Shown piece after piece: positions 13,315 to 60,007 of a stretch of DNA of 64,000 bases (its first letter is position 1; every line of letters begins with the position of its first letter). The notes beneath the pieces were generated by a model, which did not search any database, was not told the DNA's origin, and saw only the letters and a program-made list of their open reading frames with translations. The DNA lies in the sequence record NC_061443.1; one strand, given 5' to 3'. A program made the position numbers and the translations under genes.

Positions 13315-14583
13315 ATGGCACGTGGATTTGGTGACATTCAGGACAACAGCAAACGTGATAGTCTGCGTGAGTCCGAAATCTTTGAAATCTTCCCGCTCTC
13401 AAAGAAAGCAAACGGCAACTGGGTATCAATCCGCCTGTTAGATCTCGACCTGCTTCCTATCAAGAAGCACTGGATCAAGATCATGGGCGGCAAAGACAAA
13501 GATAAAGAAATCAAAATCCCGCGCATGTGCGTCAGCTTCGATCCGGACAATCAGAACAAACCTCTGAACGGTATGAAGTGTCCGTACTGCGGTATTGCAC
13601 ATGGCAACGACGAATCCGGTGCGCCCGCGCAGTACGACTACAAGTGGTATGCGCAAGCGATCATCCGTGACGAGCAAGCCGCCGCGCCACGTAAAATGCC
13701 GAAGCTCACTAAGAAAGAGCAGAAATCCGGCAAGAAAGAAATGGGTAGCGAATCATGGACCCCGGTCATGTGTATTCCGCTGTCTAACTCTCTGGCGCAG
13801 AAAATCAAAGACCTGGGTGAGCGCAACATTCACACGGTCAAAGATAAGAAGTCTGGCAAGAAGTCTAAGCAGGCATTCCAGGTCAACCATCCGAAGTACG
13901 GTTGTGATATCGAAATCAAATACAACCCGAAAAAATCTCCTGCCGAGCGTTACACGCTTGAGCGCGGTGACCCATCTCCACTGACCGGTGACGAGAAAGA
14001 ATATCTGACCTGGGACTTCGACAACTGGAACGAAATCTACGACATGCTCGGCCGTCTGAATGAAGAAGCTGCAATGGCTGACTTCAAGAAGATGGACGTT
14101 ATCGGCGTTAACACCAATGATTCTGACGATGGTGATGACGAAGATGAAGACGACGACATGGCGCTGGGTCGTGGCAAGAAGGGTGCTAAAGGCGATAAGA
14201 AAAAACGCCGCAGCGACGATGACGATGACGACGAAGATGAAGACGAAGATGATCGTCCGTCCAAGAAGTCTAAAAAGTCCAAGCCGACCAAGTCGCGCAA
14301 AATGCTGGACGATGATGAAGACGACGAAGATGATGAAGATGAAGACGAAGATGATCGTCCATCTAAAAAATCCAAGAAGTCTGCTAAGTCCAGCAAGTCT
14401 TCTAAGTCGTCCAAGAAGTCTAAGAAGTCAGATGATGACGACGAAGACGAAGACGACAAGCCTGCCAAGAAGAAAAAGAAATCTTCTGACAAGGTGAAAT
14501 CATCCGATAAGAAGAAAAAGAAAAAGTCTTCTGATGACGATGACGACGACAAGCCAGCGAAGAAGAAAAAGAAGAAAAAGTAA
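13315..14583 (+). CDS. gp32-like single-stranded DNA-binding protein with long charged tail
   Basis: N-terminal G.W..IRLL...H...C....CPYC pattern typical of T4 gp32-like SSBs; located directly upstream of recA; D/E and K blocks in the C-terminal third. Confidence 0.65.
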   Translation: MARGFGDIQDNSKRDSLRESEIFEIFPLSKKANGNWVSIRLLDLDLLPIKKHWIKIMGGKDKDKEIKIPRMCVSFDPDNQNKPLNGMKCPYCGIAHGNDESGAPAQYDYKWYAQAIIRDEQAAAPRKMPKLTKKEQKSGKKEMGSESWTPVMCIPLSNSLAQKIKDLGERNIHTVKDKKSGKKSKQAFQVNHPKYGCDIEIKYNPKKSPAERYTLERGDPSPLTGDEKEYLTWDFDNWNEIYDMLGRLNEEAAMADFKKMDVIGVNTNDSDDGDDEDEDDDMALGRGKKGAKGDKKKRRSDDDDDDEDEDEDDRPSKKSKKSKPTKSRKMLDDDEDDEDDEDEDEDDRPSKKSKKSAKSSKSSKSSKKSKKSDDDDEDEDDKPAKKKKKSSDKVKSSDKKKKKKSSDDDDDDKPAKKKKKKK

Positions 14584-14641: not shown

Positions 14642-17164
14642 ATGGCGAAAGTGAACAACAAGGCCGAGAAAAAGGCCGAGAAGAAAGCTAAAGTTAAAGC
14701 GAAGAAAGGCGGAGCCGAAGCAGTAGCATCTGACGATGTTGGTGGCGTAGAGCTGCTGGGCTTTGACTTAGCAAGCCTGATGGACGATGTGCTTGACGGC
14801 ATCGAGAAGAAAACGAAAGTAAGTTCGCAAGACGCAGCACGACACGCACCTCGTATTTCGACTGGTTGCCTTGCGCTTGACATGTACCTCAGCGGCGGTA
14901 TCGTACCTGGCGGATGGTATACGTTCAGCGGCGGCGAGCAGTCCTGTAAGTCTACAATGACCATGAGCATTATGGCGAGCTTGATTCGTCTGAAATACTC
15001 TGGCATTAGCGTAGTGTTCGACTATGAAGGTTCAACCGATGCAGAGTACGTTGCTGGTCAGTTGAAAACGTTTGGCGTTAAGGTTGACCCGAAAACTATC
15101 TTCGGTGTGCGTGACGACAAAGATGGTAGCTGGATCGTTAAGCCTAAGATTCGCTACTATGCACCAGACAACGGTGAGCGCTTCTTCGACTACATGTCCA
15201 TGTTGCGTCGTCGTCTGCCTGATAAGATCGTAGAGAAAGATGGCTCTGCGTATTACCTCTTTGAGAACAACAAAGAGAACGCGAAGAAAGTTGCTGGCAA
15301 GTACGACAAGAAATGGTTCAGTCGTAACAACCAGTTCAAAGTACCTGCGAACGACGGTCATATGCAGGCTATGGTTATCGTTGACTCTTATCCAGCGATG
15401 CTGCCTGATCAGGTCGATGATGATGACGGTTCGAAAGCAATGGCGTTGCAAGCGCGTATGTTCTCTGACGGCATCAAACGTTTCCGTGGCGGTATGCGTC
15501 GTAAGATGATGACCATCGTGGGCGTTAACCAGTTGCGCCAGAAGCCTGCTGTAATGTTCGGCAGCCCTGAGTATGAACCTGGAGGCGATGCGTTGAAGTT
15601 CTACTGCTTCGACCGGGACACTCTGATTCGTACCGACCACGGCGTGTTGACTGCGCCTCAGATCAAAGAGCTGCTAGACGCTGGCACCGAAGTCTCTGTT
15701 GAATCGTTCGACGGTTATCAGAAGATCAACGGCGCATGGCTTGTCGATGACGCACCGTTCCCGTTCGAGTTGAACGCTGGTGGTCATGTGTATGTTGGCT
15801 CGGCAGAACATCGCCAGTTCACTCTCATGCACGACCTGACTGCCGAAGGTACTCCTGTGCTGCGTCCTGAGTGGAACACGCTCAATCAACTGGCGCAGCA
15901 TCCAGAATCGCAAGGTCAGTACGCTGCTTTACGTGTACCACCTGTTAAGGAACTGAAAGAGAAAGTTCCTGATGCCTTTGATGAAGCTAACGGCTTTATC
16001 TGCGCGTTGATTGAAACGTATAAGCCTGTCAGTCGTCAACTACCTCTGGTAACTCACGGCGATACAACGTTTGCTGCGAATTGCCTGTACATCGACATGA
16101 GCACCAGTGAGGACGATTCGTCATTCTGGGTTCAACGTCTGCTGGACATTGGCATCTTTGCGTATTCAGACGAAACGGGCATCTGGTTGCCAGGTCTGTA
16201 TGAGCACGAACTGACTGCGGCGCTTGCTGCCGACGAACTCGGTGCGTTTGCTGGTATCAGCTTTGAAGCGACCTGTCGTCAACGTCAGACTCAAATGCTG
16301 ACCGTGATTGTCGATCACTTCCCTGAGCTGGTGCGTTACGTTCTGGACTATCAGTTGCAGACAGGCGAAGACAAAATCTATCTGGCGCCTGAGAACGACT
16401 TCGCTCAAGCGCTTGATCTGATTCTGCACAAAGAGATCGCTGGCTACGATGACATGTACGACCTGCTGATGTTCCAGCTGGCGTATGTTGATGACTGGTA
16501 TAACTTCGACTCTGCAATTCTGCCTGTGCCGTTTACGCTTCGTGCGCTTGACGAACAACGCGAGTTCTGGGATGTGAACGTTGAAGAAACTGCGGTAGTT
16601 ATTACCAACGGCTTCGTGTCTCATAACAGTGACGTGCGTGTGCGTCTGGCTTCTCGTGCTGTGCCTGAAGGTTGGCCGAAGCTGAAAGATGCTCCAGGCA
16701 TCGTTGGTGAGAAGTCTGTTACCGTAGAAGGTGGTACTGACCGATACCGCTTCATCGCTGCTAAGACCATCAAGAACAAGATGGGCGGCATCCCGAACCA
16801 GCAGACGTGGTTACGTTTGTGGGAAGCTGATGGTAACGGCGAAGCGCGTGGCTTTGACCCAGTGTTTGACACATGGCACTATCTGAAAACTCTCGGCCTC
16901 GTTAACGGTAGCCGTAAGTCGTTCAAACTGAAAGCGCCATGCCCTCTCGCATCCGATGTTAAGATGGACTGGGATGACTTCCGTACTCTTATCAACGGCA
17001 GCAAAGAGCAAGTTGTCGGCGTGTGTAAGAAACTGAAAGTCAAACCATCTGGCCTTCGCCTGTGGTGCTTCAAGTTCGTTCAGTCCACTAAGGGCAACGA
17101 AATGTTGAAGAACGCAATCAGTAAGTCCGCCAAAAGCTCTGATGATGACGGCGACGACGATTAA
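14642..17164 (+). CDS. recA: RecA/UvsX-family recombinase with intein
   Basis: RISTG...LD..L.GG, Walker A GGEQSCKST, IVDSYPAML, MALQARM, VNQLRQK, GGDALKFY; extein resumes as SDVRVRL and ..KNK. Confidence 0.92.
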   Translation: MAKVNNKAEKKAEKKAKVKAKKGGAEAVASDDVGGVELLGFDLASLMDDVLDGIEKKTKVSSQDAARHAPRISTGCLALDMYLSGGIVPGGWYTFSGGEQSCKSTMTMSIMASLIRLKYSGISVVFDYEGSTDAEYVAGQLKTFGVKVDPKTIFGVRDDKDGSWIVKPKIRYYAPDNGERFFDYMSMLRRRLPDKIVEKDGSAYYLFENNKENAKKVAGKYDKKWFSRNNQFKVPANDGHMQAMVIVDSYPAMLPDQVDDDDGSKAMALQARMFSDGIKRFRGGMRRKMMTIVGVNQLRQKPAVMFGSPEYEPGGDALKFYCFDRDTLIRTDHGVLTAPQIKELLDAGTEVSVESFDGYQKINGAWLVDDAPFPFELNAGGHVYVGSAEHRQFTLMHDLTAEGTPVLRPEWNTLNQLAQHPESQGQYAALRVPPVKELKEKVPDAFDEANGFICALIETYKPVSRQLPLVTHGDTTFAANCLYIDMSTSEDDSSFWVQRLLDIGIFAYSDETGIWLPGLYEHELTAALAADELGAFAGISFEATCRQRQTQMLTVIVDHFPELVRYVLDYQLQTGEDKIYLAPENDFAQALDLILHKEIAGYDDMYDLLMFQLAYVDDWYNFDSAILPVPFTLRALDEQREFWDVNVEETAVVITNGFVSHNSDVRVRLASRAVPEGWPKLKDAPGIVGEKSVTVEGGTDRYRFIAAKTIKNKMGGIPNQQTWLRLWEADGNGEARGFDPVFDTWHYLKTLGLVNGSRKSFKLKAPCPLASDVKMDWDDFRTLINGSKEQVVGVCKKLKVKPSGLRLWCFKFVQSTKGNEMLKNAISKSAKSSDDDGDDD
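15605..16627 (+). mobile_element. intein (341 aa) in RecA
   Basis: begins CFDRDTLI (block A) right after ALKFY; ends ITNGFVSHN followed by Ser +1. Confidence 0.92.
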
Positions 17165-17169
17165 TCCCT

Positions 17170-17189
17170 GAGCGGGCTTCGGCCTGCTC
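17170..17189 (+). terminator. hairpin after recA
   Basis: GAGCGGGC-TTCG-GCCTGCTC; no U tract. Confidence 0.55.
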
Positions 17190-17207
17190 CCCACTCTGGA
17201 GTAAGAA

Positions 17208-17636
17208 ATGCGTACTCAAATCTACACCGCTGATATCGTTAATCTGGAGACCGTCGTCGTTGATGACGAAGGCCAAGAGACACGTAGCCCTACCATCGTT
17301 CCTAATCTCGAAGGCGAACGCGATCTGACTGTCAGCACGCTCGGTACTATCATGGCTACGGTGCAAGCGGAACCAAACGCTGATGCTCGCATGATCGTTC
17401 TGGTGTCTCGCGCTCTGGTCCCTGCATTCGCAGATCCTGAAGGTGACCTGTTCGATATCTTCGACCCAATCGAACGTGTTGCTGATGTTGTTGCTGGGAA
17501 TGTTGGTAGCATTCTCGGTATGCAGGTAGTAATCAACGATAAGTCTGACGACAACGTTCTGGCTATCGCTGATGTTCTCGACAACGAAGCTGGTGTTACC
17601 ATTCGTACCTACGGCGCTGCTGTTATTAGTGCGTAA
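17208..17636 (+). CDS. acidic hypothetical protein
   Basis: GGAG RBS. Confidence 0.8.
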   Translation: MRTQIYTADIVNLETVVVDDEGQETRSPTIVPNLEGERDLTVSTLGTIMATVQAEPNADARMIVLVSRALVPAFADPEGDLFDIFDPIERVADVVAGNVGSILGMQVVINDKSDDNVLAIADVLDNEAGVTIRTYGAAVISA

Positions 17637-17679
17637 GTAAATCGTGTGCGAGAGAATGCCCTTTCGCACACACTCTTAT

Positions 17680-17732
17680 CTCGATAGGCAATGCGCCACG
17701 AGAAAACAAACCACTCGATAGGCAATGCGCCA
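17680..17732 (+). repeat. two perfect 19-bp direct repeats CTCGATAGGCAATGCGCCA
   Basis: copies at 17680-17698 and 17714-17732 (34-bp period), ending at the RBS of 17743. Confidence 0.9.
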
Positions 17733-17742
17733 GGAGTAATGT

Positions 17743-18450
17743 ATGAAAAAGATTCAACACGTAGTTCTTCCGACTGATGCTCTTAACGGCCTTATTCACG
17801 GCTTCCATCATCACAGCAGGACAACCGAGGAGTTCTGCAAATCCCTGTTCTACATTGATGTGACTAATCGAAGCGCACATGACGCTCTCTATTCCATCCT
17901 CAAACGAGACAAGACCTTAGGAATTATCCCTATGGGTTACGACAACGAGAAAGATGCGCGAGGGCATACCTCCCCTGCATCGCTGGCTATCGTGCTGTCT
18001 AACAATTTACTGCATCTGGATGACACGAAAATGTCCAGAGGCATTCTCAATATCTTCGGAGCACTGGCCCGAACCACGCACACTAACGATACTCAAATAA
18101 CAGTGTACGGCGAACCAGGCGTAGATAAAATTCTCAATATCGTGCGTCGTGTTGACTACCGAGATTATACTGAGGGCTCCGGTGTTAGTGCTGACGTAGT
18201 GATTGGAGATTTTGAACTACAATCGAATATCACAATAGACAATTTCGTATCAATGGCGATTGACCCTAAGTTCGAAGACGATGTACGGAACTCGCCTGCC
18301 ACGGAATACAAACTCGGCAGCAACTTCATGTTCATGCACCCTGATGAACTTGCTAAGGCTGTTCGCCTGATACGACGTTGCAGCAAGACCTGCATAATGC
18401 ACCCTGACCTGCATCGCTATTACTTTGAGAATGTAATCTGTAAATACTGA
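17743..18450 (+). CDS. hypothetical protein, paralogue of 19589..20356
   Basis: AGGAG RBS; shared C-terminal F...PDEL....K..I.H.D..R..FE..I. Confidence 0.8.
   Translation: MKKIQHVVLPTDALNGLIHGFHHHSRTTEEFCKSLFYIDVTNRSAHDALYSILKRDKTLGIIPMGYDNEKDARGHTSPASLAIVLSNNLLHLDDTKMSRGILNIFGALARTTHTNDTQITVYGEPGVDKILNIVRRVDYRDYTEGSGVSADVVIGDFELQSNITIDNFVSMAIDPKFEDDVRNSPATEYKLGSNFMFMHPDELAKAVRLIRRCSKTCIMHPDLHRYYFENVICKY
18438..18446 (+). promoter_or_regulatory. CTGTAAATA box upstream of the AcrVA2-like gene
   Basis: at the 3' end of the upstream CDS, 115 nt before ATG 18553. Confidence 0.4.
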
Positions 18451-18497
18451 TCACCAACCGAACACATTGCTGTGTGTAGTCTAGCCCGACTTGGGCA

Positions 18498-18528
18498 GGG
18501 GAGAGCCGGATGGCCTCCCCATTTTTTT
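18498..18528 (+). terminator. intrinsic terminator or attenuator
   Basis: GGGGAG...CTCCCC-ATTTTTTT. Confidence 0.65.
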
Positions 18529-18552
18529 GTCTACAGGCAGCAGGAGAACACC

Positions 18553-19542
18553 ATGTCCAAATCGACTCCTCAAATCTTCCTTGACCTGTTTCTCAAGGAC
18601 GTCAGAATCTTTCTGCCTAAGTTCGACAAGGGACTTGAGGCGTATTTTCAGAAATGCAAAGGCAAGCCAGGTATGTCTGGTGTGTCACTTCATCAATATA
18701 TGAAGTGGCTCAACCCGCGCGCAAAATGCCCTGCTAGCCCGAGTGAGATCTCTATCATAACGTCAGGTTATCTGCATTACTTCTGGCAATTCTCAAAGCC
18801 GAACTTTGTCTTTGACCCTACGATTGTAAATCACTTGGTCGACTCAGTATTGCCTGACGAATTACCTGCCGAAGTGCTGCATCGACTGCCTTACTGGAGT
18901 CAGTGGATAACGATGCCTGTCAGATTGCAGAGCAAAGACAAGACTACGCAACTGGACTTCGATGGTGCGTTCGTGGGTTACACGAATATCAACGGTAGAC
19001 CTGCGCTTTCACTCGCAGCACCGTTTGTCTCAGATGACCTGAGCATACGCTCGAACGACTTCACACCGTTCGTCACATCATACGTGTATCTGGACCAACC
19101 TGTTAAGCCTGAGTTGCTGGTCACGAACTGCCACTTGCTTAATGTTGCAGACACGGTAAGCCGCGATCAATTCGCCTCACTGATAATCAACGTTCATCAC
19201 TACCTGACGAAGATTGTTTGCTGTGTGCTGTACATCTGCTCCGAACAGCAGGCGCTGCATACAGAAGGTCACTCGCAGCCTAGACCTCAACGCTTAGGCA
19301 AAAGCTATCGCATCACTCCGCCGAAGGATGATCGTGTGATCACGCTAGGCACGGAGATGGCGCAATTGCTTAAAGACTTCGAAGCGGAAGTCGAAACGTG
19401 TACTCGCGCTTTCAATGGACGCAGACCGCATCTGAGGAGAGCGCACTACCATCACTTCTGGACAGGACCTAAAGTAGGCGAACAGGTTCTGATCTGCAAG
19501 TGGTTGCCACCGAGAGTTGTTAGAGGAACCATCCCGCAATAA
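18553..19542 (+). CDS. AcrVA2/FinQ-family-like protein
   Basis: AGGAG RBS; LPDELPAEVLHRLPYW, LYICSEQ, C-terminal RRPHLRRAHYHHFWTG...KWLPP parallel AcrVA2 LPDDTPTSIFLNLPDW, LWLCVAEP, KRPHIRRGHWHGYWQG...RWQP (recalled sequence). Confidence 0.7.
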   Translation: MSKSTPQIFLDLFLKDVRIFLPKFDKGLEAYFQKCKGKPGMSGVSLHQYMKWLNPRAKCPASPSEISIITSGYLHYFWQFSKPNFVFDPTIVNHLVDSVLPDELPAEVLHRLPYWSQWITMPVRLQSKDKTTQLDFDGAFVGYTNINGRPALSLAAPFVSDDLSIRSNDFTPFVTSYVYLDQPVKPELLVTNCHLLNVADTVSRDQFASLIINVHHYLTKIVCCVLYICSEQQALHTEGHSQPRPQRLGKSYRITPPKDDRVITLGTEMAQLLKDFEAEVETCTRAFNGRRPHLRRAHYHHFWTGPKVGEQVLICKWLPPRVVRGTIPQ

Positions 19543-19588
19543 CTCGTTATCAATACTCCACGTATGGGCGTTAGGCCCGGAGGCTATT

Positions 19589-20356
19589 ATGAAATCTCGT
19601 GTACAAACTCTATGGATTCCTGATATGGAATCGTATGAACCTTACGTTCGGTCTCTGTGTCATATGGCGCGAGCACTGGAAAACACTGGCCGGAACTACG
19701 GCACGATGAAACGTGTTGTGGTCATTGGTATGTCAAAGCGTAGTGTCGAATCCTACGTCAAGCAGTTGCTCAACTCAAGCACACTGCCAAACACTCTCGT
19801 ATGCTACGGCATCGACGAATCGCCTGTGAGCCACAAGGAGTTCACGTTCTCAGGTGCACACATCGTACTGATGCACGATCTGCGTTACGCCTGTCACGAG
19901 TCACTAGGTCGTGTGGCAGGTCGTGTTGTTGATATCATCGACAGCCTGAAACAGAAAGACGGCGATAAGGAACTCAAGAACACCTGCCTGTCCGTCGTCT
20001 ACCAAATACCCTCACTGTGGTCAAACATTTTAGAGTATGGCGCAAACAGTTTCATTAACATGGGAAGCAAACACGTAGAGTACCGCAGCGGCTTGGTGTC
20101 GTCTGTCAGTCTTGATGCGTTGATGAAGTGTTATGAAAACAAAGACTACCATGAACTTCATGCTGAGGTGATCACGATAGGTAAGGAGTTCCTGTGCGTC
20201 CAGCCTGACGAACTGCTTAATAAGGTAGGCAACTTACTGTGGTCACTCGCATCTACTGGTAGTAAGTTTGAGAAGACACACAAAATTGTCTTCCACGAAG
20301 ACTTCCGACGCTTGTTCTTCGAAGAATACATCCTCAGAGACTTCCGGGGTTTTTAA
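19589..20356 (+). CDS. hypothetical protein, paralogue of 17743..18450
   Basis: GGAGG RBS before ATG 19589. Confidence 0.8.
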   Translation: MKSRVQTLWIPDMESYEPYVRSLCHMARALENTGRNYGTMKRVVVIGMSKRSVESYVKQLLNSSTLPNTLVCYGIDESPVSHKEFTFSGAHIVLMHDLRYACHESLGRVAGRVVDIIDSLKQKDGDKELKNTCLSVVYQIPSLWSNILEYGANSFINMGSKHVEYRSGLVSSVSLDALMKCYENKDYHELHAEVITIGKEFLCVQPDELLNKVGNLLWSLASTGSKFEKTHKIVFHEDFRRLFFEEYILRDFRGF

Positions 20357-20431
20357 GATTAATCTTAGTCCAGTTCTCTAATTTCAATATGTTGGCAAGT
20401 AGTGCTGACTTATCGTTATTGGAGAAATAAC

Positions 20432-20692
20432 ATGTGCGGACGTAGCCTAGTCAGGTTGAAGTACCTCGCACGGTCATCGAACTGGTGCAATAATAAAGTA
20501 AACGCTTGTAGTGAGCGGAAGGCGAAGAATGTACAATGCGAACAATTTTTGGAAGCAACCAAGAATTGCCGCAGTGAACAGAAGTCGTCCAGTGTAGTTT
20601 CTTTCTTCAAAGGTCATGAGCTGGTTGGTCAAGCTATATGGCATGAGATAGAAGGCGACAACACACTTCAATTCCGGTTGCTACTTGCCTAA
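20432..20692 (+). CDS. small hypothetical protein
   Basis: GGAG RBS before ATG 20432. Confidence 0.55.
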   Translation: MCGRSLVRLKYLARSSNWCNNKVNACSERKAKNVQCEQFLEATKNCRSEQKSSSVVSFFKGHELVGQAIWHEIEGDNTLQFRLLLA

Positions 20693-20791
20693 CGACAGAG
20701 GGCCTTTCAGAGTAAAATCTGGTGGGCCCTTTCTTCTTTATATGCTAATTTTCCCTGTCATTAACACACAATCCGACTTCGGGGTAACACT

Positions 20792-22789
20792 ATGTCTTTG
20801 ATTAAAATCGAAGGCGTCCAATCATTGTCTGCGCCAACCAAAGCCCAGAAAGACGCCGCTGTTTATATGTTTGGTTCTAAGGGCCATTCAATCGTTGCTG
20901 TGCTCGACAAATTCAGTCGCGCCAAAGAAGTGCGCACCGCACACATCGACGGTCTGCTCAAGCTGATGAAGGAAGGCGAAGATGATGATATCGTCAAGTT
21001 CGTCGCATCTGCTGCGGGCAAGAAGTCCATCGCTGCCGCGAAACAGTTTGCCATTGCCAAGACCTTGGCTGCGTCTATCAAAGCGCTGAAACTGGTACGT
21101 GTGCCAATGAAGTGGATTGAAGGTCACTCTGATGCTGCCGCTGCTCGCATCACCGAGACGAAAGAAATCCGCGCACGTAAGACTGCGGGCAACAAGCCAG
21201 AGAAGCCTATCAAGCTCGATAACCCACACGCTCCAGAAGCAGTCACTATCGATCAGACCAAAACCAACTCTGCTCTGAGCAAAGTCTACAAGCTGCCTAA
21301 GACCGCAGCGGGTTATGGTTCAGCGCTCACACCCCAGTGGAAAGCAATTATCGCTGCCGCTAATACTGCGTTAGGTGGTATGTTTGTTCTCAAGTGGGCC
21401 AAATCAGAAGGTGGCGCGCAGATCATTCCTACAGGTAAAGGCTATCGCTCAATTCCTAATGCGTACCTGACCGCGGCCATTGATGAAAACAGTTGGTTCA
21501 TGTATGCCGTTGCGCCTACTGATAAGAAAGGCGCAGGTATCGAAGGTAAGATGATCGGTAACCAACTGACCATGGCTTCTATCGCTGCCTTCATGCGTGA
21601 TGTTATGGCACAGCAAAACTCGCCAGTAACTGCTGCAATTAATAAAATGATTGCTGGTGCTACTGTCTTCGATAAAGAAATCGTTCACACAGAAGCAAAT
21701 GACCCTACACTGAAAGCAATTGGTGACGCCAAACGTGCTCAGGATGCAGAGGGTACTGCGAAAGGCGCTATCAACTCTGTTACTAAAATCACCTCTGCAA
21801 ACGTGTCTAAGATTACTCGTGGCGCACAGATCAAGATCGAGCAACAGCTTGATAGCAAATTGAGTGGCGTGTTGAATAACGCGCAGTTCCGTGAGAAAGG
21901 TACCTACGCAGCACTTGACGGCTACCTGTTCGAGATGAATGCGCCTACGTCGTACAAAGATATGCCAAATATCGCCAGCTACGCAATCATTCCTCCTCAG
22001 ACCCGAACAGGTCTGTCAGGTAAGAACTGGCGTGTGAGTGCGTTGGCTATCGGTCGTGCCTCAGCCACTGCTATCATTGATATCGGTCCTACGTTCTCTT
22101 TGGCTAAAGTCAAGTCTGCTGTACGTCAACTTGCCTCAGCCTCTCCTGTAGGCGGCTCGACTGGTACTTCTTCTCCCAAAGGCGTCAAAGAACAGCGCTT
22201 CCTGAACAACCTCCTGTTCAATCTGAACGCGAATGGTAAAGACATTCAGATCGACGGCGACAATGCCTCTATTGGTCTGTTTGAGAAGAACTACATTGAC
22301 ACTGCACCTGCTGCGCTCAATGTCAGCTTCTTGCCTCAGGACGGCTACGCGTTTGTTCGTGCACCTAATGCCACAAATGCCGCCAAATGGATTGCGTGGG
22401 CTAACAAGAAATCAAGCCGCACCCTTCTGCCTGAGCAAGCTGCTTCAATCCCACATTCACCAACAGGCAAATCTCCAATCGCCTTAGTTGATGAACTGGC
22501 CGAAGTCCCTGCACGTAAAATCTCTGCGAAGCCTCTGCAGGCGCGTGAAGAATATTTCAACGCACTGCGTACGGTAATCCAGAACAACCTGCCTAAGCGT
22601 GAAGTGTCTGCGACCTCTACTGGTGTTGTAATCGGTGGTGGTAGCAAGCTGCACACCTTACGTCTGGACAACAACGCATGGACGTTACAGACAGGCGTTA
22701 CTGGCAAAGCTAAACGTATCGGTACCACGTTCGATATCGTTGACTTGCTGGGGATGTTGGACAAAGGCATTCTGCGTCCTAAAGCATAA
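20792..22789 (+). CDS. large Ala/Lys-rich protein, probable virion/internal protein
   Basis: 665 aa, terminator on each side, N-terminal VQSLSA motif. Confidence 0.6.
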   Translation: MSLIKIEGVQSLSAPTKAQKDAAVYMFGSKGHSIVAVLDKFSRAKEVRTAHIDGLLKLMKEGEDDDIVKFVASAAGKKSIAAAKQFAIAKTLAASIKALKLVRVPMKWIEGHSDAAAARITETKEIRARKTAGNKPEKPIKLDNPHAPEAVTIDQTKTNSALSKVYKLPKTAAGYGSALTPQWKAIIAAANTALGGMFVLKWAKSEGGAQIIPTGKGYRSIPNAYLTAAIDENSWFMYAVAPTDKKGAGIEGKMIGNQLTMASIAAFMRDVMAQQNSPVTAAINKMIAGATVFDKEIVHTEANDPTLKAIGDAKRAQDAEGTAKGAINSVTKITSANVSKITRGAQIKIEQQLDSKLSGVLNNAQFREKGTYAALDGYLFEMNAPTSYKDMPNIASYAIIPPQTRTGLSGKNWRVSALAIGRASATAIIDIGPTFSLAKVKSAVRQLASASPVGGSTGTSSPKGVKEQRFLNNLLFNLNANGKDIQIDGDNASIGLFEKNYIDTAPAALNVSFLPQDGYAFVRAPNATNAAKWIAWANKKSSRTLLPEQAASIPHSPTGKSPIALVDELAEVPARKISAKPLQAREEYFNALRTVIQNNLPKREVSATSTGVVIGGGSKLHTLRLDNNAWTLQTGVTGKAKRIGTTFDIVDLLGMLDKGILRPKA

Positions 22790-34093: not shown

Positions 34094-35671
34094 ATGAAAA
34101 AGATTAAACACACTTTCCGTCTGACCGACTTGGTACACATCGCCAAACTTCCTGCAGGTATGTCCAAATTCCATGAAGGTTCGGATGCGATTGTTGTCGG
34201 CCGCAACGAAGATAGTGACCAGTATACCCTGCATGTTAAACATGTCGGTGAGCTTTCTTGGTATGAAGGTAAATCGTTGACGTTGATCAGCCATAACAAT
34301 GGCGAACTGCTTGACCAGTGGGAAGCGGGCGACTACGGCCGTGACAAGAAAAAGAAACGCAAGATCCCAAAAGAGCTGCGTAACTTCACGGCTATCCTGC
34401 CTGTTACCTGCAACGCCGATTGTTCGTTCTGCCCTGAGAAAGAAATGGAGCAGAAAGCCACTCAACAAGAGTGGCAAGACAATCTGATCTACAGCATCAA
34501 ACGTATGACGCTGAAAACCCGATTCGACCACATATCAATCTCAGGTGGCGAGCCTTCGTTGCGTTCGAAGTTCTTGTTCGAGACTATCGACCGCATTCAG
34601 AAAGAAACGCCAATCAAGAAAGTCGGCCTGACTTCTAACGGCTTCTTCCTTGAAAAGCAAAACAGCACGTTCGACTTCTTAGATCGCAACACTACGCCTG
34701 AGATGACTAGCAAGCTGTCGCATCTGAATATCAGTATGCACTCGTTTATGCGTGAACGTGCGAACAAGATCATGGGCGTGAACTACAAACAGACGCTGGA
34801 AGATTTGGTTCGTTTCCGTCGCCAGCTGGGTCGTGATGTTAGCTTTCACATCAATTTTGTGATCAACGACAAGACTGGCTCTATTACGGAAGAGTTCAAA
34901 ATGGCCGCTAACTTCATGCGAGCCAATCCGTTTATCGACGTTGTGTTCCGTGTTGACTACAACGATGTTGAACTGTCGAAAGCGTTGCGTGAATACGCTA
35001 TGGAATATGAAGCGTGGCAGGAAGCAAGCCGTATCGCAATCGCAACTCGCAAGAAATGCAAAGTGAAAGAGCCTAAAGCTCCGCACATCGTTCAGAAGTT
35101 TGACCGCTACTTCGGTGGCCAGAACCTTGCAGATGTTGAAAGCGCTTGGACTACAGGCTGCCCGTCATGTTTCACCCATGCGTCGAACCCTGTCAATAAC
35201 AGTCGCGCATATTTGAAAGCGTCCTCGTATGAACCGAACGAAGACGAAGAAGAATACACTGAGCTGGTGTATCACATGGACGGCACACTGTACTGGGATT
35301 GGACTCGTAATGACCCAGTGCCTGCGCCGCGTAGCAAGCGTTTTGACTTCGACATGAAAGACGAAGAAGATACGCAGCCTAAGAGCAAGAGCAAGAACAA
35401 AAAGACTGAACAAGATAAGGCGTGGGAACATGGTTCCGTAGCCGAGGCGATTAACGCCAATCGCTGCTCGTTCGGTCCTGCGGCACCTCATCATTGCTCT
35501 TACGATTCTACTGGTACTGCCGTGGCTCCGCAGACAGTCAAGCCGCAGCCTAAGACTGTTAAGGCGAAAACAGTCAAACCTTCTAAGAAAGTGAGCAAAG
35601 GTAAAGTTTCAACCACACCTGGCGGTTCCCCTGGCGTGTGTGGTTACGGTCATAGTCGTTGTGGTTACTAA
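34094..35671 (+). CDS. radical SAM protein with N-terminal extra domain and Cys/Gly-rich C-terminal tail
   Basis: CNADCSFC (CxxxCxxC) at 34409; ISGGEPSL; LTSNG; NISMH; GAGGA RBS favours ATG 34094. Confidence 0.85.
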   Translation: MKKIKHTFRLTDLVHIAKLPAGMSKFHEGSDAIVVGRNEDSDQYTLHVKHVGELSWYEGKSLTLISHNNGELLDQWEAGDYGRDKKKKRKIPKELRNFTAILPVTCNADCSFCPEKEMEQKATQQEWQDNLIYSIKRMTLKTRFDHISISGGEPSLRSKFLFETIDRIQKETPIKKVGLTSNGFFLEKQNSTFDFLDRNTTPEMTSKLSHLNISMHSFMRERANKIMGVNYKQTLEDLVRFRRQLGRDVSFHINFVINDKTGSITEEFKMAANFMRANPFIDVVFRVDYNDVELSKALREYAMEYEAWQEASRIAIATRKKCKVKEPKAPHIVQKFDRYFGGQNLADVESAWTTGCPSCFTHASNPVNNSRAYLKASSYEPNEDEEEYTELVYHMDGTLYWDWTRNDPVPAPRSKRFDFDMKDEEDTQPKSKSKNKKTEQDKAWEHGSVAEAINANRCSFGPAAPHHCSYDSTGTAVAPQTVKPQPKTVKAKTVKPSKKVSKGKVSTTPGGSPGVCGYGHSRCGY

Positions 35672-58387: not shown

Positions 58388-60007
58388 ATGGCTCGTATCG
58401 AAACTAACACTAATCTGGTTGGCAAAACTATCGTCCTGCTGAACGGCACCAAAGCTAAAATCGAAGATGCAATCGCGTCTGGTTACAAAGTGAAAGGCCA
58501 GACCAAACGTATCGCCACTCGCTGCGTTATCAAAGAAGGCGCTCACTTCAAAGAAATCGAGCGCATGAACATGAGCCTGCTGGAAGATACTGGCGAAGGT
58601 TATGTGAAGCTGAAAGACGCGAAAGCGGCGAAAGCGTCAACCAAGAAACCAGCGGCGAAAGAGAAAGCGCCGAAAGCAGATAAGAAAGCTGCGAAGCCTG
58701 CGAAAGAGAAAGAACCTAAGGTTCGTCGTAAGTCTTCAAAAGAGAAAGGCGACGAGTATCAAGATCTGGCACACGCTATCATCAAAGGCGGCAAACGTGC
58801 GGCGCCTGTTGAAATCGCTGAAATCGACGCTGACCTGACCGACTGTGTTGCTCAACGTCTGGTAGACGTGTTGAACAATAGCGAAGTTGCGAAGCTGTGC
58901 GCCGATAACAAGACGCCGATCGCAAACGCAGTCGAAGTAACGTACGGCGCTGAGTTCGCTCCTGAGACGAACGTCATGCAGATCACGTTGAGCCTGCAAT
59001 ATGCGAAGCCTGTTCAAGCGCTGTCTCGTCCGACTCTGGAAAACGCAGAAGCTATCGCGTTACGTGCTCAAAAAATGGCGGCGCCTAAGCTGTCTATGAA
59101 ACTCAAGAAAGCGATTCGTGAAGCGTTCAGCCTTGAAGACGCTAACGACCTTGAGCTGGGCACTGTGTTGTTGTCTGACGGCGAAGAATTTGTGTACTTC
59201 GGCGAATCTGCGAAGCATGTCGGCAAAGCGCTGCTGTATGTCGTAGAGACCGACAAGTTCAAATCTGTGCTGGGTTCTACTCTGGGTGAGTATGAAATCC
59301 CAGACGAAGAAGACGGCGAAGAGGAAGAAGAAGAAGTCGAAGACGAGTCCGAGGAAGAGGAAGAAGAGGATGAAGTCGAAGACGGCGAAGAAGAAGACGG
59401 CGAAGAAGAAGACGACGCCGAATATGAATACGTCGCAGTTAACAAAGACCAGCTCGATATGGTCAACAAGAAAGTGACTGCCAAGTATCACGCTGCGCTG
59501 GCTGAACGATTCAATACGACCGAAGAAGTTCTGATTCCTGGCCTGATGCTGACTGATGGCGAAACTACTTTCGCTTATCTGGGCTGTGATAGTAAAGGCG
59601 GGCTGCTGGTAATCGACTGTGGTGATGAAGGCGAAGGTGAAGACGTGCTGATGTATAGCAAGTCTGATATCAAACAGCTGGACGACTTCAATCCTGTGAT
59701 GGGCGAAGCTGACGAAGACGGCGAAGAATCTGATGCCGAAGAAGACGACGGCGAAGACGGCGACGATGAAGAAGATCTGGATGATGAAGAAGACGGCGAC
59801 GATGAAGAAGATCTGGATGATGAAGAAGGCGACGACGAAGACGAAGACGACAACGACTTTGACTTCGACGATGTGCCAGAAGCTGATATCGAAGATCTGA
59901 CCGAAGACGAACTGCGTGACCGCGTAGTTGAAGCCGGCCTGACTACTCCGCGTAAAGCTGATAACATGGACGAAGCTAAACTGCGCAAGCTGCTGAAAAG
60001 CGCATAA
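58388..60007 (+). CDS. large acidic multidomain protein (histone-like K/A linker, acidic tracts, HeH-like C-terminus)
   Basis: GAGGAG RBS; strongly biased codons suggest high expression. Confidence 0.85.
   Translation: MARIETNTNLVGKTIVLLNGTKAKIEDAIASGYKVKGQTKRIATRCVIKEGAHFKEIERMNMSLLEDTGEGYVKLKDAKAAKASTKKPAAKEKAPKADKKAAKPAKEKEPKVRRKSSKEKGDEYQDLAHAIIKGGKRAAPVEIAEIDADLTDCVAQRLVDVLNNSEVAKLCADNKTPIANAVEVTYGAEFAPETNVMQITLSLQYAKPVQALSRPTLENAEAIALRAQKMAAPKLSMKLKKAIREAFSLEDANDLELGTVLLSDGEEFVYFGESAKHVGKALLYVVETDKFKSVLGSTLGEYEIPDEEDGEEEEEEVEDESEEEEEEDEVEDGEEEDGEEEDDAEYEYVAVNKDQLDMVNKKVTAKYHAALAERFNTTEEVLIPGLMLTDGETTFAYLGCDSKGGLLVIDCGDEGEGEDVLMYSKSDIKQLDDFNPVMGEADEDGEESDAEEDDGEDGDDEEDLDDEEDGDDEEDLDDEEGDDEDEDDNDFDFDDVPEADIEDLTEDELRDRVVEAGLTTPRKADNMDEAKLRKLLKSA
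59756..59827 (+). repeat. 36-bp perfect tandem duplication (DGDDEEDLDDEE x2)
   Basis: units 59756-59791 and 59792-59827. Confidence 0.9.

What the first reader, a model, noticed from the sequence alone, without database searches (positions are those of the whole stretch)
18553..19542. Full-length AcrVA2/FinQ-like protein in an enterobacterial-type jumbo phage: likely a co-translational silencer of an unknown host target
Seen: collinear motifs along the whole protein (FW...F.FD..I...L.D..LPDELPAEVLHRLPYW; FDG.F..Y; ..KIVCCVLYICSEQ; P......LG; RRPHLRRAHYHHFWTG...KWLPP). Known: AcrVA2, recalled as having LPDDTPTSIFLNLPDW, LLWLCVAEP and KRPHIRRGHWHGYWQG...RWQP, binds the nascent Cas12a N-terminus and triggers loss of its mRNA; homologues include plasmid FinQ. 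Cas12a is uncommon in enterobacteria. Inference: the same nascent-chain-directed mRNA-decay mechanism may here target a different defence or host protein, which would be a new anti-defence activity.
Basis: partly seen in the sequence, partly recalled or inferred. Interest (0 to 1): 0.8.

Follow-up and report, generated by a model that had tools for sequence, protein, structure and literature searches.

The report
AcrVA2/FinQ-family gene in Erwinia jumbo phage
An unannotated gene of a large Erwinia phage is a clear, full-length relative of AcrVA2, a protein that silences one chosen gene while it is being translated; the host has no known Cas12a, so the target here is probably something else and remains unknown.

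Summary
Window 18553-19542 (+) is an intact 329-aa ORF, gp247 of Erwinia phage pEa_SNUABM_2 (265 kb, Alexandravirus), annotated "hypothetical protein".

- **Family membership is firm.** A single-sequence search hits only AcrVA2 in the PDB (E 1.9e-5). A family profile hits it end to end (E 8.5e-41). The AlphaFold model matches only 7CI1/7CI2. tblastn reaches plasmid FinQ. All five residues shown experimentally to matter in AcrVA2 are conserved.
- **Function is inferred, not shown.** The proposed role is co-translational, polypeptide-specific mRNA silencing of a non-Cas12a target. E. amylovora is reported to carry only type I-E CRISPR-Cas.
- **The idea is not new.** The AcrVA2 paper already says homologues on megaphages and plasmids probably act on other targets, and Pfam has an "AcrVA2-like" family. 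This is a new member of a known kind.
- **What I add.** The gene sits at one fixed locus beside sigma-SSB-UvsX in five jumbo-phage genera. It behaves as an exchangeable cassette: phages with 98% identical UvsX carry alleles only 31% identical, with sharp boundaries at conserved intergenic spacers, under purifying selection. A conserved leader ends in a terminator-like hairpin 24 nt before the start codon.

The target is unknown.

The parts
18553..19542 (+). AcrVA2/FinQ-family protein gene (gp247, 329 aa, 37.7 kDa, pI 8.9), intact
   Evidence: ORF and start. PDB hit is AcrVA2 only: E 1.9e-5 single sequence, 8.5e-41 profile. The fold matches 7CI1/7CI2 only. PHROG 6160, E 2.5e-51.
18553..18792 (+). 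N-terminal helical part (residues 1-80); variable across the family, contains the near-invariant W78
   Evidence: Model helices 6-34, 46-53 and 63-78. Share of the commonest residue is 0.34 for residues 1-60. W78 aligns with AcrVA2 W79.
18793..19272 (+). Middle beta-sheet domain plus long helix (residues 81-240); presumed target-peptide-binding body, variable; contains D88 and the conserved Y227/C229/S230 patch
   Evidence: Model strands 83-179 and helix 204-237. Conservation 0.36-0.49. D88 aligns with AcrVA2 D89.
19273..19539 (+). C-terminal module (residues 241-329) with the invariant core P292 H293 R295 H298 H300 ... K316 W317 (residues 290-320 = nt 19420-19512)
   Evidence: These columns are invariant in 29 diverse relatives. 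H293/R295/H298 align with AcrVA2 H286/R288/H291, whose mutation abolishes mRNA down-regulation. The C-terminal part is reported to bind ribosomes.
18543..18548 (+). Ribosome-binding site (GGAGAA) 5-10 nt before the ATG
   Evidence: Sequence; invariant in five relatives.
18459..18530 (+). Conserved non-coding leader between gp246 and gp247. It holds a conserved box, a small hairpin, then a G+C-rich hairpin (18498-18520) followed by T7 (18522-18528), i.e. terminator-like, 24 nt before the ATG
   Evidence: 91-98% nucleotide identity in relatives whose flanking genes are about 70% identical. Retained before both allele types and in Y3 and SNUABM_7. Unique in the window. No Rfam hit.
19543..19588 (+). 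Conserved spacer downstream of the gene; the 3' boundary of the exchangeable cassette
   Evidence: 83-100% identity. In AD1 versus SNUABM_33 identity jumps from about 0.5 to 0.96 here.
17743..18450 (+). gp246, upstream neighbour of unknown function; variable, and its alleles assort independently of gp247
   Evidence: 30-83% aa identity within the genus. No Pfam, PHROG or PDB hit.
19589..20356 (+). gp248, downstream neighbour of unknown function; always adjacent in this phage clade, alpha/beta fold with no known match
   Evidence: 46 phage records, Erwinia and Dickeya only. Model pLDDT 83.8. Best PDB match E 0.017.

Best explanation
gp247 is a bona fide member of the AcrVA2/FinQ family (Pfam 'AcrVA2-like'). 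By analogy with AcrVA2, its variable N-terminal and middle parts most likely recognise a short peptide near the N-terminus of one particular protein as it emerges from the ribosome. Its invariant C-terminal module (H293-x-R295-x-x-H298 ... K316-W317) would hold it on the ribosome and trigger loss of that protein's mRNA through a host enzyme. The phage is lytic and the mechanism blocks only new synthesis. The target should therefore be something made during infection, and it is not Cas12a: an induced host defence or stress protein, or a gene of a rival resident or co-infecting element, as FinQ does to the F plasmid. Shown: homology, fold, conserved functional residues, purifying selection, fixed locus, allele replacement. 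Inferred: the activity, ribosome binding and the class of target. Unknown: the target itself.
For: Sequence, profile and fold place it in the family with no competing hit. FinQ is reached directly by tblastn: 593 plasmid records, E about 9e-6, 85% coverage. All five AcrVA2 residues whose mutation weakens or abolishes function have identical counterparts (W78, D88, H293, R295, H298). The C-terminal three are invariant in 29 diverse relatives. The conservation pattern fits 'variable recogniser plus constant effector': 0.73 for residues 291-325 against 0.34-0.49 elsewhere. [quoted passage not shown] The gene is functional: dN/dS is 0.07-0.13 and composition is phage-like. It is kept at one locus in five genera. 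Deeply diverged alleles are swapped within a genus: UvsX 98% against 31%. That is the pattern expected of a gene whose specificity is under diversifying pressure. E. amylovora is described as having only type I-E CRISPR-Cas plus a I-F remnant.
Against: No expression, binding or transcript data exist for this protein or for any jumbo-phage homologue. AcrVA2 and this protein share only about 17% identity in the structural alignment, with TM 0.54-0.59, so the activity could have drifted. Silencing new synthesis does little against defences already present, which weakens the anti-defence reading for a lytic phage. That caveat comes from the AcrVA2 authors themselves. A fixed position next to replication and recombination genes is more typical of a core phage function than of an accessory anti-defence gene. 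Absence of Cas12a from the hosts rests on literature, not on a genome scan done here.
Confidence: 0.6

Rival explanations
1. Same biochemical mechanism, but the target is the phage's own or a housekeeping host gene. On this reading gp247 is a temporal regulator or host-takeover factor, for example shutting off an early phage protein or one host protein co-translationally, rather than an anti-defence or anti-rival weapon.
For: Single copy at a fixed locus inside the sigma-SSB-UvsX module in five genera. Purifying selection. A gene-specific conserved leader suggests regulated expression. Silencing of new synthesis suits temporal control in a lytic cycle.
Against: Alleles only 31% identical replace each other in backbones with 98% identical UvsX, with no matching swap in the immediate neighbour. 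gp248 stays 90% identical at nucleotide level between AD1 and SNUABM_33. gp246 and gp247 alleles assort independently. A regulator of a conserved phage or host protein would be expected to stay conserved. Only about 15 kb around the locus was compared, so a co-swapped partner elsewhere in the genome is not excluded.
Confidence: 0.2
2. The fold and motif are conserved but the activity differs from the AcrVA2 model. One possibility is a factor that causes premature transcription termination or polarity, or general modulation of translation, without recognition of a specific nascent chain.
For: The biochemical step that destroys the mRNA is still undefined for AcrVA2 itself. FinQ is known only to lower F transfer-gene mRNA levels, with the mechanism never determined. 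No enzyme-like structural neighbour was found for the model; the next PDB hit is E 0.45.
Against: The residues required for mRNA down-regulation in AcrVA2 are invariant across the family, which argues for a shared core activity. The variable remainder of the protein is hard to explain without a variable ligand.
Confidence: 0.15
3. It is a genuine type V-A anti-CRISPR that silences Cas12a in the phage's hosts.
For: Homology to AcrVA2. AcrVA2 acts on Cas12a orthologues only 35% identical to each other.
Against: E. amylovora is described as carrying type I-E CRISPR-Cas and a I-F remnant only, and the paper never mentions Cas12. Most family members occur where Cas12a is absent. Of the three AcrVA2 residues that contact a Cas12a peptide, only one has an identical counterpart, and those columns are variable or gapped in the family. 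The Moraxella phage homologues are only about 19% identical to gp247.
Confidence: 0.03

Closest known systems
AcrVA2 (Moraxella bovoculi prophage; PDB 7CI1 / 7CI2; Marino et al., bioRxiv 10.1101/2022.11.29.518452)
   Same: Same length class (329 against about 322 aa) and the same three-part architecture. It is the only PDB match by sequence, profile and fold. Counterparts of W79, D89, H286, R288 and H291 are identical.
   Different: About 17% identity. The host lacks Cas12a according to the literature. It is carried by a strictly lytic 265-kb phage rather than a prophage, and no AcrVA1-like partner is evident beside it. The peptide-contact residues reported for the Cas12a 620-636 peptide are mostly not conserved. 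The target is unknown.
FinQ (fertility inhibition protein of IncI-type conjugative plasmids)
   Same: Direct tblastn similarity over 85% of the protein (E about 9e-6). It is a family member that acts on a non-CRISPR target, lowering F transfer-gene mRNA levels. This is the best precedent for the family being used in conflicts between mobile elements in enterobacteria.
   Different: About 23% identity. FinQ is plasmid-borne and acts in long-term co-residence, whereas gp247 must act within one lytic cycle.
Other phage homologues: Shewanella phage vB_SbaS_Y11 ORF43 (annotated AcrVA2), Erwinia phage RisingSun gp126 (annotated 'putative mycothiosynthase'), and Klebsiella, Salmonella and Escherichia jumbo phages
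   Same: Same family by tblastn and by predicted fold. The hosts likewise have type I systems or no reported Cas12a.
   Different: They lie in other genomic contexts. None has been tested either.
Modular gene shuffling between conserved regulatory cassettes in T4-type phages (promoter/stem-loop 'PeSL' elements; cited from my own knowledge, not checked here)
   Same: Variable coding cassettes are bounded by intergenic sequences better conserved than the genes, with sharp identity jumps at those spacers.
   Different: The spacers here are unique rather than a repeated family within the window, so exchange would occur between homologous loci of different phages, not between loci.

Membership tests
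AcrVA2-like / FinQ protein family (Pfam PF26125) | Significant, near full-length sequence similarity to AcrVA2 | tested here: met
   phmmer E 1.9e-5, query 66-321 against chain 68-314. Profile of 29 relatives: E 8.5e-41, positions 15-319 of 324 against chain 14-318 of 323, and no other PDB hit.
AcrVA2-like / FinQ protein family (Pfam PF26125) | Match to the Pfam model PF26125 itself | tested here: inconclusive
   hmmscan against the Pfam copy at hand gave nothing for gp247, nor for relatives that carry the precomputed PF26125 label. The model therefore seems to be missing from that copy. All 54 relatives, including a 96%-identical cluster, are labelled PF26125, and that accession is named 'AcrVA2-like'. 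NCBIfam gave no hit.
AcrVA2-like / FinQ protein family (Pfam PF26125) | Three-part fold of the AcrVA2 crystal structure | tested here: met
   Model pLDDT 85.1, pTM 0.85. Foldseek against PDB: 7ci2_A and 7ci1_A/B at E 3e-11 to 1e-10, probability 1.00, TM 0.49-0.59 over about 334-344 columns. The next hit is E 0.45.
AcrVA2-like / FinQ protein family (Pfam PF26125) | C-terminal H-x-R-x-x-H motif (AcrVA2 H286, R288, H291), required for mRNA down-regulation | tested here: met
   H293, R295 and H298 align to these residues (numbering). They are invariant in 29 of 29 sequences, as are H300, K316 and W317.
AcrVA2-like / FinQ protein family (Pfam PF26125) | Conserved N-terminal-half residues W79 and D89 (moderate loss of function when mutated) | tested here: met
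   W78 and D88 align to them. W is present in 28 of 29 sequences and D in 23 of 29.
AcrVA2-like / FinQ protein family (Pfam PF26125) | Similarity to plasmid FinQ | tested here: met
   tblastn against plasmids: 593 records, mostly genes annotated finQ on conjugative E. coli and Salmonella plasmids, E about 9e-6, residues 41-320.
Type V-A anti-CRISPR (functional class of AcrVA2) | The host carries Cas12a | tested here: not met
   Literature only: E. amylovora has a type I-E system flanked by two arrays plus a remnant I-F array, and the paper does not mention Cas12. No genome scan for Cas12a was run here.
Type V-A anti-CRISPR (functional class of AcrVA2) | Residues of AcrVA2 that hold the Cas12a 620-636 peptide (E98, D129, D195) | tested here: not met
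   E98 aligns with V99 and D129 with D129; the D195 region aligns poorly. Column 99 is variable and column 129 is mostly gaps in the family. Caveat: the triple mutant kept its activity in vivo, so these residues do not define function.
Type V-A anti-CRISPR (functional class of AcrVA2) | Lies in an acr locus (next to another acr or an aca regulator) | tested here: inconclusive
   The neighbours gp245, gp246, gp248 and gp249 have no Pfam, PHROG or PDB match. No helix-turn-helix regulator was detected. AcrVA1 cannot be searched for by name.
Nascent-chain-directed mRNA silencer (mechanism of AcrVA2) | Selective, translation-dependent loss of one mRNA; binding to the target's N-terminal peptide | not testable with these tools
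   Needs transcript and binding data; none exist for this protein.
Nascent-chain-directed mRNA silencer (mechanism of AcrVA2) | [quoted passage not shown] | not testable with these tools
   Reported for AcrVA2 in a 2026 summary. Here only the conservation of that part can be shown.

The most novel reading that the evidence does not exclude
The locus is a natural specificity-swap site. Jumbo phages of at least five genera keep one slot, with a conserved leader and conserved spacers. Deeply diverged AcrVA2-family alleles are exchanged into that slot, each tuned to a different nascent polypeptide, for example different inducible defence proteins or genes of rival elements in Erwinia and Dickeya. 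That would make these phages a ready-made collection of polypeptide-specific gene silencers with non-CRISPR targets. It would also show that co-translational silencing is a general phage strategy, not a Cas12a curiosity.
Probability: 0.3. Interest if true: 0.75.

Novelty: new member of a known kind. Interest (0 to 1): 0.45.

Why it matters
AcrVA2 is so far the only bacterial example of a protein that destroys one specific mRNA after reading the peptide it encodes, and only its Cas12a target is known. The family is very large: 6,085 clusters at 50% identity in the profile search. Most members sit where Cas12a is absent. A culturable phage-host pair with several natural, sharply different alleles at one locus is a practical place to find a second target. 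It would also show how recognition is encoded. For annotation, more than 50 Erwinia and Dickeya jumbo-phage records that read 'hypothetical protein', and one that reads 'putative mycothiosynthase', can be renamed AcrVA2-like.

Tried and rejected
- **Family scans.** Pfam and NCBIfam scans of gp247 and its relatives gave nothing. I read this as a missing model, not as evidence against membership.
- **Promoters and terminators.** The sigma-70 promoter and terminator scan found nothing above chance near the gene and missed the bulged hairpin.
- **Leader as a repeated element.** I asked whether the conserved leader is a repeated mobile cassette. It is unique in the window.
- **Rfam.** No match in 17600-20900.
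- **Leader covariation.** Only 1 compensatory pair of 17, too few distinct sequences to decide.
- **gp246 and gp248 as paralogues.** Only a 54-residue C-terminal similarity at E 0.001, treated as weak.
- **gp246 paralogue near 34094.** Suggested by short DNA repeats but rejected. That ORF is a radical-SAM protein with no real similarity.
- **gp248 as a possible recruited nuclease.** The model is good (pLDDT 83.8), but there is no significant structural or sequence match.
- **UvsX insertion as an intein.** No Pfam, PHROG or PDB support.
- **Positive selection.** dN/dS is low, and both dN and dS are raised. The divergence therefore reflects old alleles, not fast protein evolution.
- It was redone without that row.

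Full report
**What is there.** The window is part of Erwinia phage pEa_SNUABM_2 (NC_061443.1, Alexandravirus, 265,442 bp, host Erwinia amylovora). Window position 1 is record position 186,001.

At 18553-19542 on the + strand there is an intact ORF of 329 codons. It has a GGAG ribosome-binding site 6 nt before the ATG. It is annotated MPK66_gp247, "hypothetical protein".

A longer GTG-started frame from 18472 exists mechanically. It runs through a conserved hairpin, and relatives conserve the ATG and the N-terminus, so 18553 is the start.

**Family.**
- A single-sequence search of all PDB chains returns AcrVA2 (7CI1/7CI2) as the only meaningful hit: E 1.9e-5, query 66-321 against chain 68-314.
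- A profile built from gp247 and 28 diverse relatives returns AcrVA2 alone at E 8.5e-41, over 305 of 324 profile positions.
- An AlphaFold2 model (pLDDT 85.1, pTM 0.85) matches only the AcrVA2 chains in the PDB: E 3e-11 to 1e-10, probability 1.00, TM 0.49-0.59, about 334-344 aligned columns. The next hit is E 0.45.
- tblastn against plasmids reaches 593 records, mostly genes annotated finQ on conjugative E. coli and Salmonella plasmids (E about 9e-6, 85% of the protein).
- PHROG 6160, of unknown function, matches at E 2.5e-51.
- The Pfam copy at hand gave no hit for gp247 or for its relatives. Yet all 54 relatives found in the large protein collection carry the precomputed label PF26125, which another tool names "AcrVA2-like". 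I conclude the model is absent from the local copy. NCBIfam has no model that hits.

**Functional residues.** Marino et al. (bioRxiv 10.1101/2022.11.29.518452) report two classes of AcrVA2 mutations. W79A and D89A weaken AcrVA2. H286A, R288A and H291A abolish mRNA down-regulation while leaving Cas12a binding intact.

The PDB chain index is the paper's number plus one. In the alignment these five residues face W78, D88, H293, R295 and H298 of gp247, all identical.

Across 29 diverse relatives, H293, R295, H298, H300, K316 and W317 are invariant, W78 is present in 28 and D88 in 23. Residues 291-325 are far better conserved than the rest: the share of the commonest residue is 0.73 against 0.34-0.49. 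This fits the paper's remark that AcrVA2 and FinQ agree in the C-terminal domain and diverge towards the N-terminus. It also fits a 2026 summary stating that the C-terminal part binds ribosomes and polysomes and that a cellular enzyme is recruited to degrade the mRNA.

Of the three residues that hold the Cas12a 620-636 peptide in the crystal, only one has an identical counterpart, and those columns are variable in the family. The paper shows these residues are dispensable in vivo.

**Distribution.** The family is very large. The profile finds 6,085 clusters at 50% identity with E <= 0.001 and 2,348 with E <= 1e-30, nearly all single-domain proteins of 300-360 aa.

Among sequenced phages, 92 records hold a relative:
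- 56 Erwinia phages;
- jumbo phages of Klebsiella, Salmonella, Escherichia and Dickeya (240-307 kb);
- temperate phages of Moraxella, Leptospira, Lactobacillus and Pasteurella;
- the Shewanella phage whose ORF43 has been published as a putative AcrVA2.

Each record holds one copy.

**Locus and evolution (my addition).** In Alexandravirus, Sasquatchvirus (Y3), Yoloswagvirus, Snuvirus (SNUABM_7) and Rivsvirus (SNUABM_5) the gene sits at the same place. The order is sigma factor, SSB, UvsX-like recombinase, one or two small ORFs, then the AcrVA2-like gene. A metagenomic contig shows the same order. In JA13 and RisingSun the context differs.

Within Alexandravirus the replication genes are conserved and the gp246-gp248 trio is not:

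| Protein | aa identity to the window |
|---|---|
| sigma, SSB, UvsX | 86-99% |
| gp246 | 30-83% |
| gp247 | 69-96% |
| gp248 | 64-68% |

For gp247 both dN and dS are raised: dS is 1.5-2.2 against 0.34-0.93 for UvsX and sigma. dN/dS is 0.07-0.13. These are therefore old alleles under purifying selection, not a fast-evolving protein. Composition matches the phage.

Alleles assort independently. Alexandra shares the gp247 allele (96%) but not gp246 (30%). SNUABM_35 shares gp246 (83%) but has a 69% gp247.

The clearest case is AD1 against SNUABM_33. UvsX is 98% identical, while the AcrVA2-like proteins are 31% identical. At nucleotide level identity falls from 0.83-0.89 in the upstream leader to 0.2-0.6 across the CDS. 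It returns to 0.96 in the downstream spacer.

The window-type allele group is 27-36% identical to all others. The alleles of SNUABM_33, Y3, SNUABM_7, Yoloswag and SNUABM_5 are 35-56% identical to one another.

The intergenic spacers are better conserved than the genes they separate: 91-98% before gp247 and 83-100% after it, against about 70% for most CDS comparisons. I read this as exchange of coding cassettes by recombination in conserved spacers.

**Leader.** The 102-nt spacer before gp247 holds a conserved box, a small hairpin and a G+C-rich hairpin (18498-18520) followed by seven T. It looks like an intrinsic terminator ending 24 nt before the ATG.

It is nearly invariant in Alexandravirus before both allele types. 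It is recognisable, with changed stem bases, in Y3 and SNUABM_7. Yoloswag and SNUABM_5 have a simpler hairpin plus T-run. Covariation support is thin, at one compensatory pair of 17. There is no Rfam match, and the element is unique in the window.

Whether it ends gp246 transcripts, attenuates gp247 or marks a small RNA cannot be told from sequence.

**Mechanism.** I commit to this reading: gp247 works like AcrVA2. Its variable body binds a short peptide near the N-terminus of one nascent protein. Its constant C-terminal module sits on the ribosome and triggers loss of the mRNA through a host enzyme.

The phage is lytic and the mechanism blocks only new synthesis, a limit the AcrVA2 authors note themselves. 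The target should therefore be made during infection. Cas12a is unlikely, because E. amylovora is described with a type I-E system and a I-F remnant only.

The allele replacement pattern favours a variable opponent over a conserved phage or host gene. Such an opponent could be an inducible defence, or genes of resident or co-infecting elements, as with FinQ and F. The fixed position in a replication module keeps the regulatory reading alive.

Homology, fold, residue conservation, selection and locus behaviour are shown. Activity, ribosome binding and target class are inferred. The target is unknown.

**Novelty.** The AcrVA2 paper already states that homologues occur on plasmids and megaphages, mostly without Cas12a, and may act on other targets. 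The huge-phage survey noted proteins clustering with AcrVA2. Pfam has the family. I found no paper that mentions these Erwinia and Dickeya phage genes in this light.

The finding is therefore a correct and useful annotation: a new member of a known kind. The cassette behaviour and the leader are the new descriptive elements.

**Limits.**
- Cas12a absence was taken from one paper, not scanned.
- Only about 15 kb around the locus was compared between phages.
- The neighbours remain without function.

Noticed in passing
window 17165-20431: gp245-gp248 form a variable block inside a well-conserved replication module. The intergenic spacers are better conserved than the genes (91-98% against about 70%), and alleles of neighbouring genes assort independently. 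This points to cassette exchange by recombination in the spacers.
   Followed up: yes
window 18459-18530: A conserved structured leader ends in a terminator-like hairpin plus T7 just before the AcrVA2-like gene. It is kept before both allele types and in three genera. It has no Rfam match and is unique in the window.
   Followed up: partly
window 17680-17739: Two tandem copies (92% identical, 34 nt apart) of a 26-nt sequence lie immediately upstream of the gp246 start codon (family D17). This may be a regulatory site.
   Followed up: no
window 14642-17164: The UvsX-like recombinase is 840 aa, although the profile is about 500. The RecA match is split by an insertion of roughly 370 aa that starts with Cys and ends with His-Asn before Ser, which is intein-like. 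The long form is shared by all related phages. The insertion has no Pfam, PHROG or PDB hit.
   Followed up: partly
window 22857, 28180, 42246, 45659, 57250, 58268 (35 nt each): A repeated 35-nt motif occurs six times in the window, the first copy just after gp250. It is a candidate phage-specific promoter or regulatory box (family D6).
   Followed up: no
window 20792-22789: gp250 (665 aa, no family hit) is also highly variable between relatives (43-69% nucleotide identity). In Yoloswag, SNUABM_7 and SNUABM_5 the same neighbourhood holds an EPS depolymerase or tail-spike glycosidase.
   Followed up: no
window 34094-35671: A 525-aa protein with a radical-SAM / 4Fe-4S domain (Pfam E 1.9e-11). I looked at it only to reject a suspected paralogy with gp246.
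   Followed up: partly
window 14117-14573, 59285-59900 and others: Many genes carry long Asp/Glu-rich low-complexity stretches, including the C-terminal part of the SSB (families D1-D4).
   Followed up: no
L004:5764-6765 (RisingSun gp126); L011:6854-8478 (JA13): The RisingSun homologue is annotated 'putative mycothiosynthase', which the fold and sequence do not support. In JA13 the homologue is followed directly by a gene annotated as a (p)ppGpp synthetase/hydrolase.
   Followed up: no
L005:6938-7990; L007:7064-7990: The annotated starts of the orthologues differ from the conserved ATG. Alexandra's CDS is extended upstream into the leader, and AD1's starts about 20 codons too late.
   Followed up: partly
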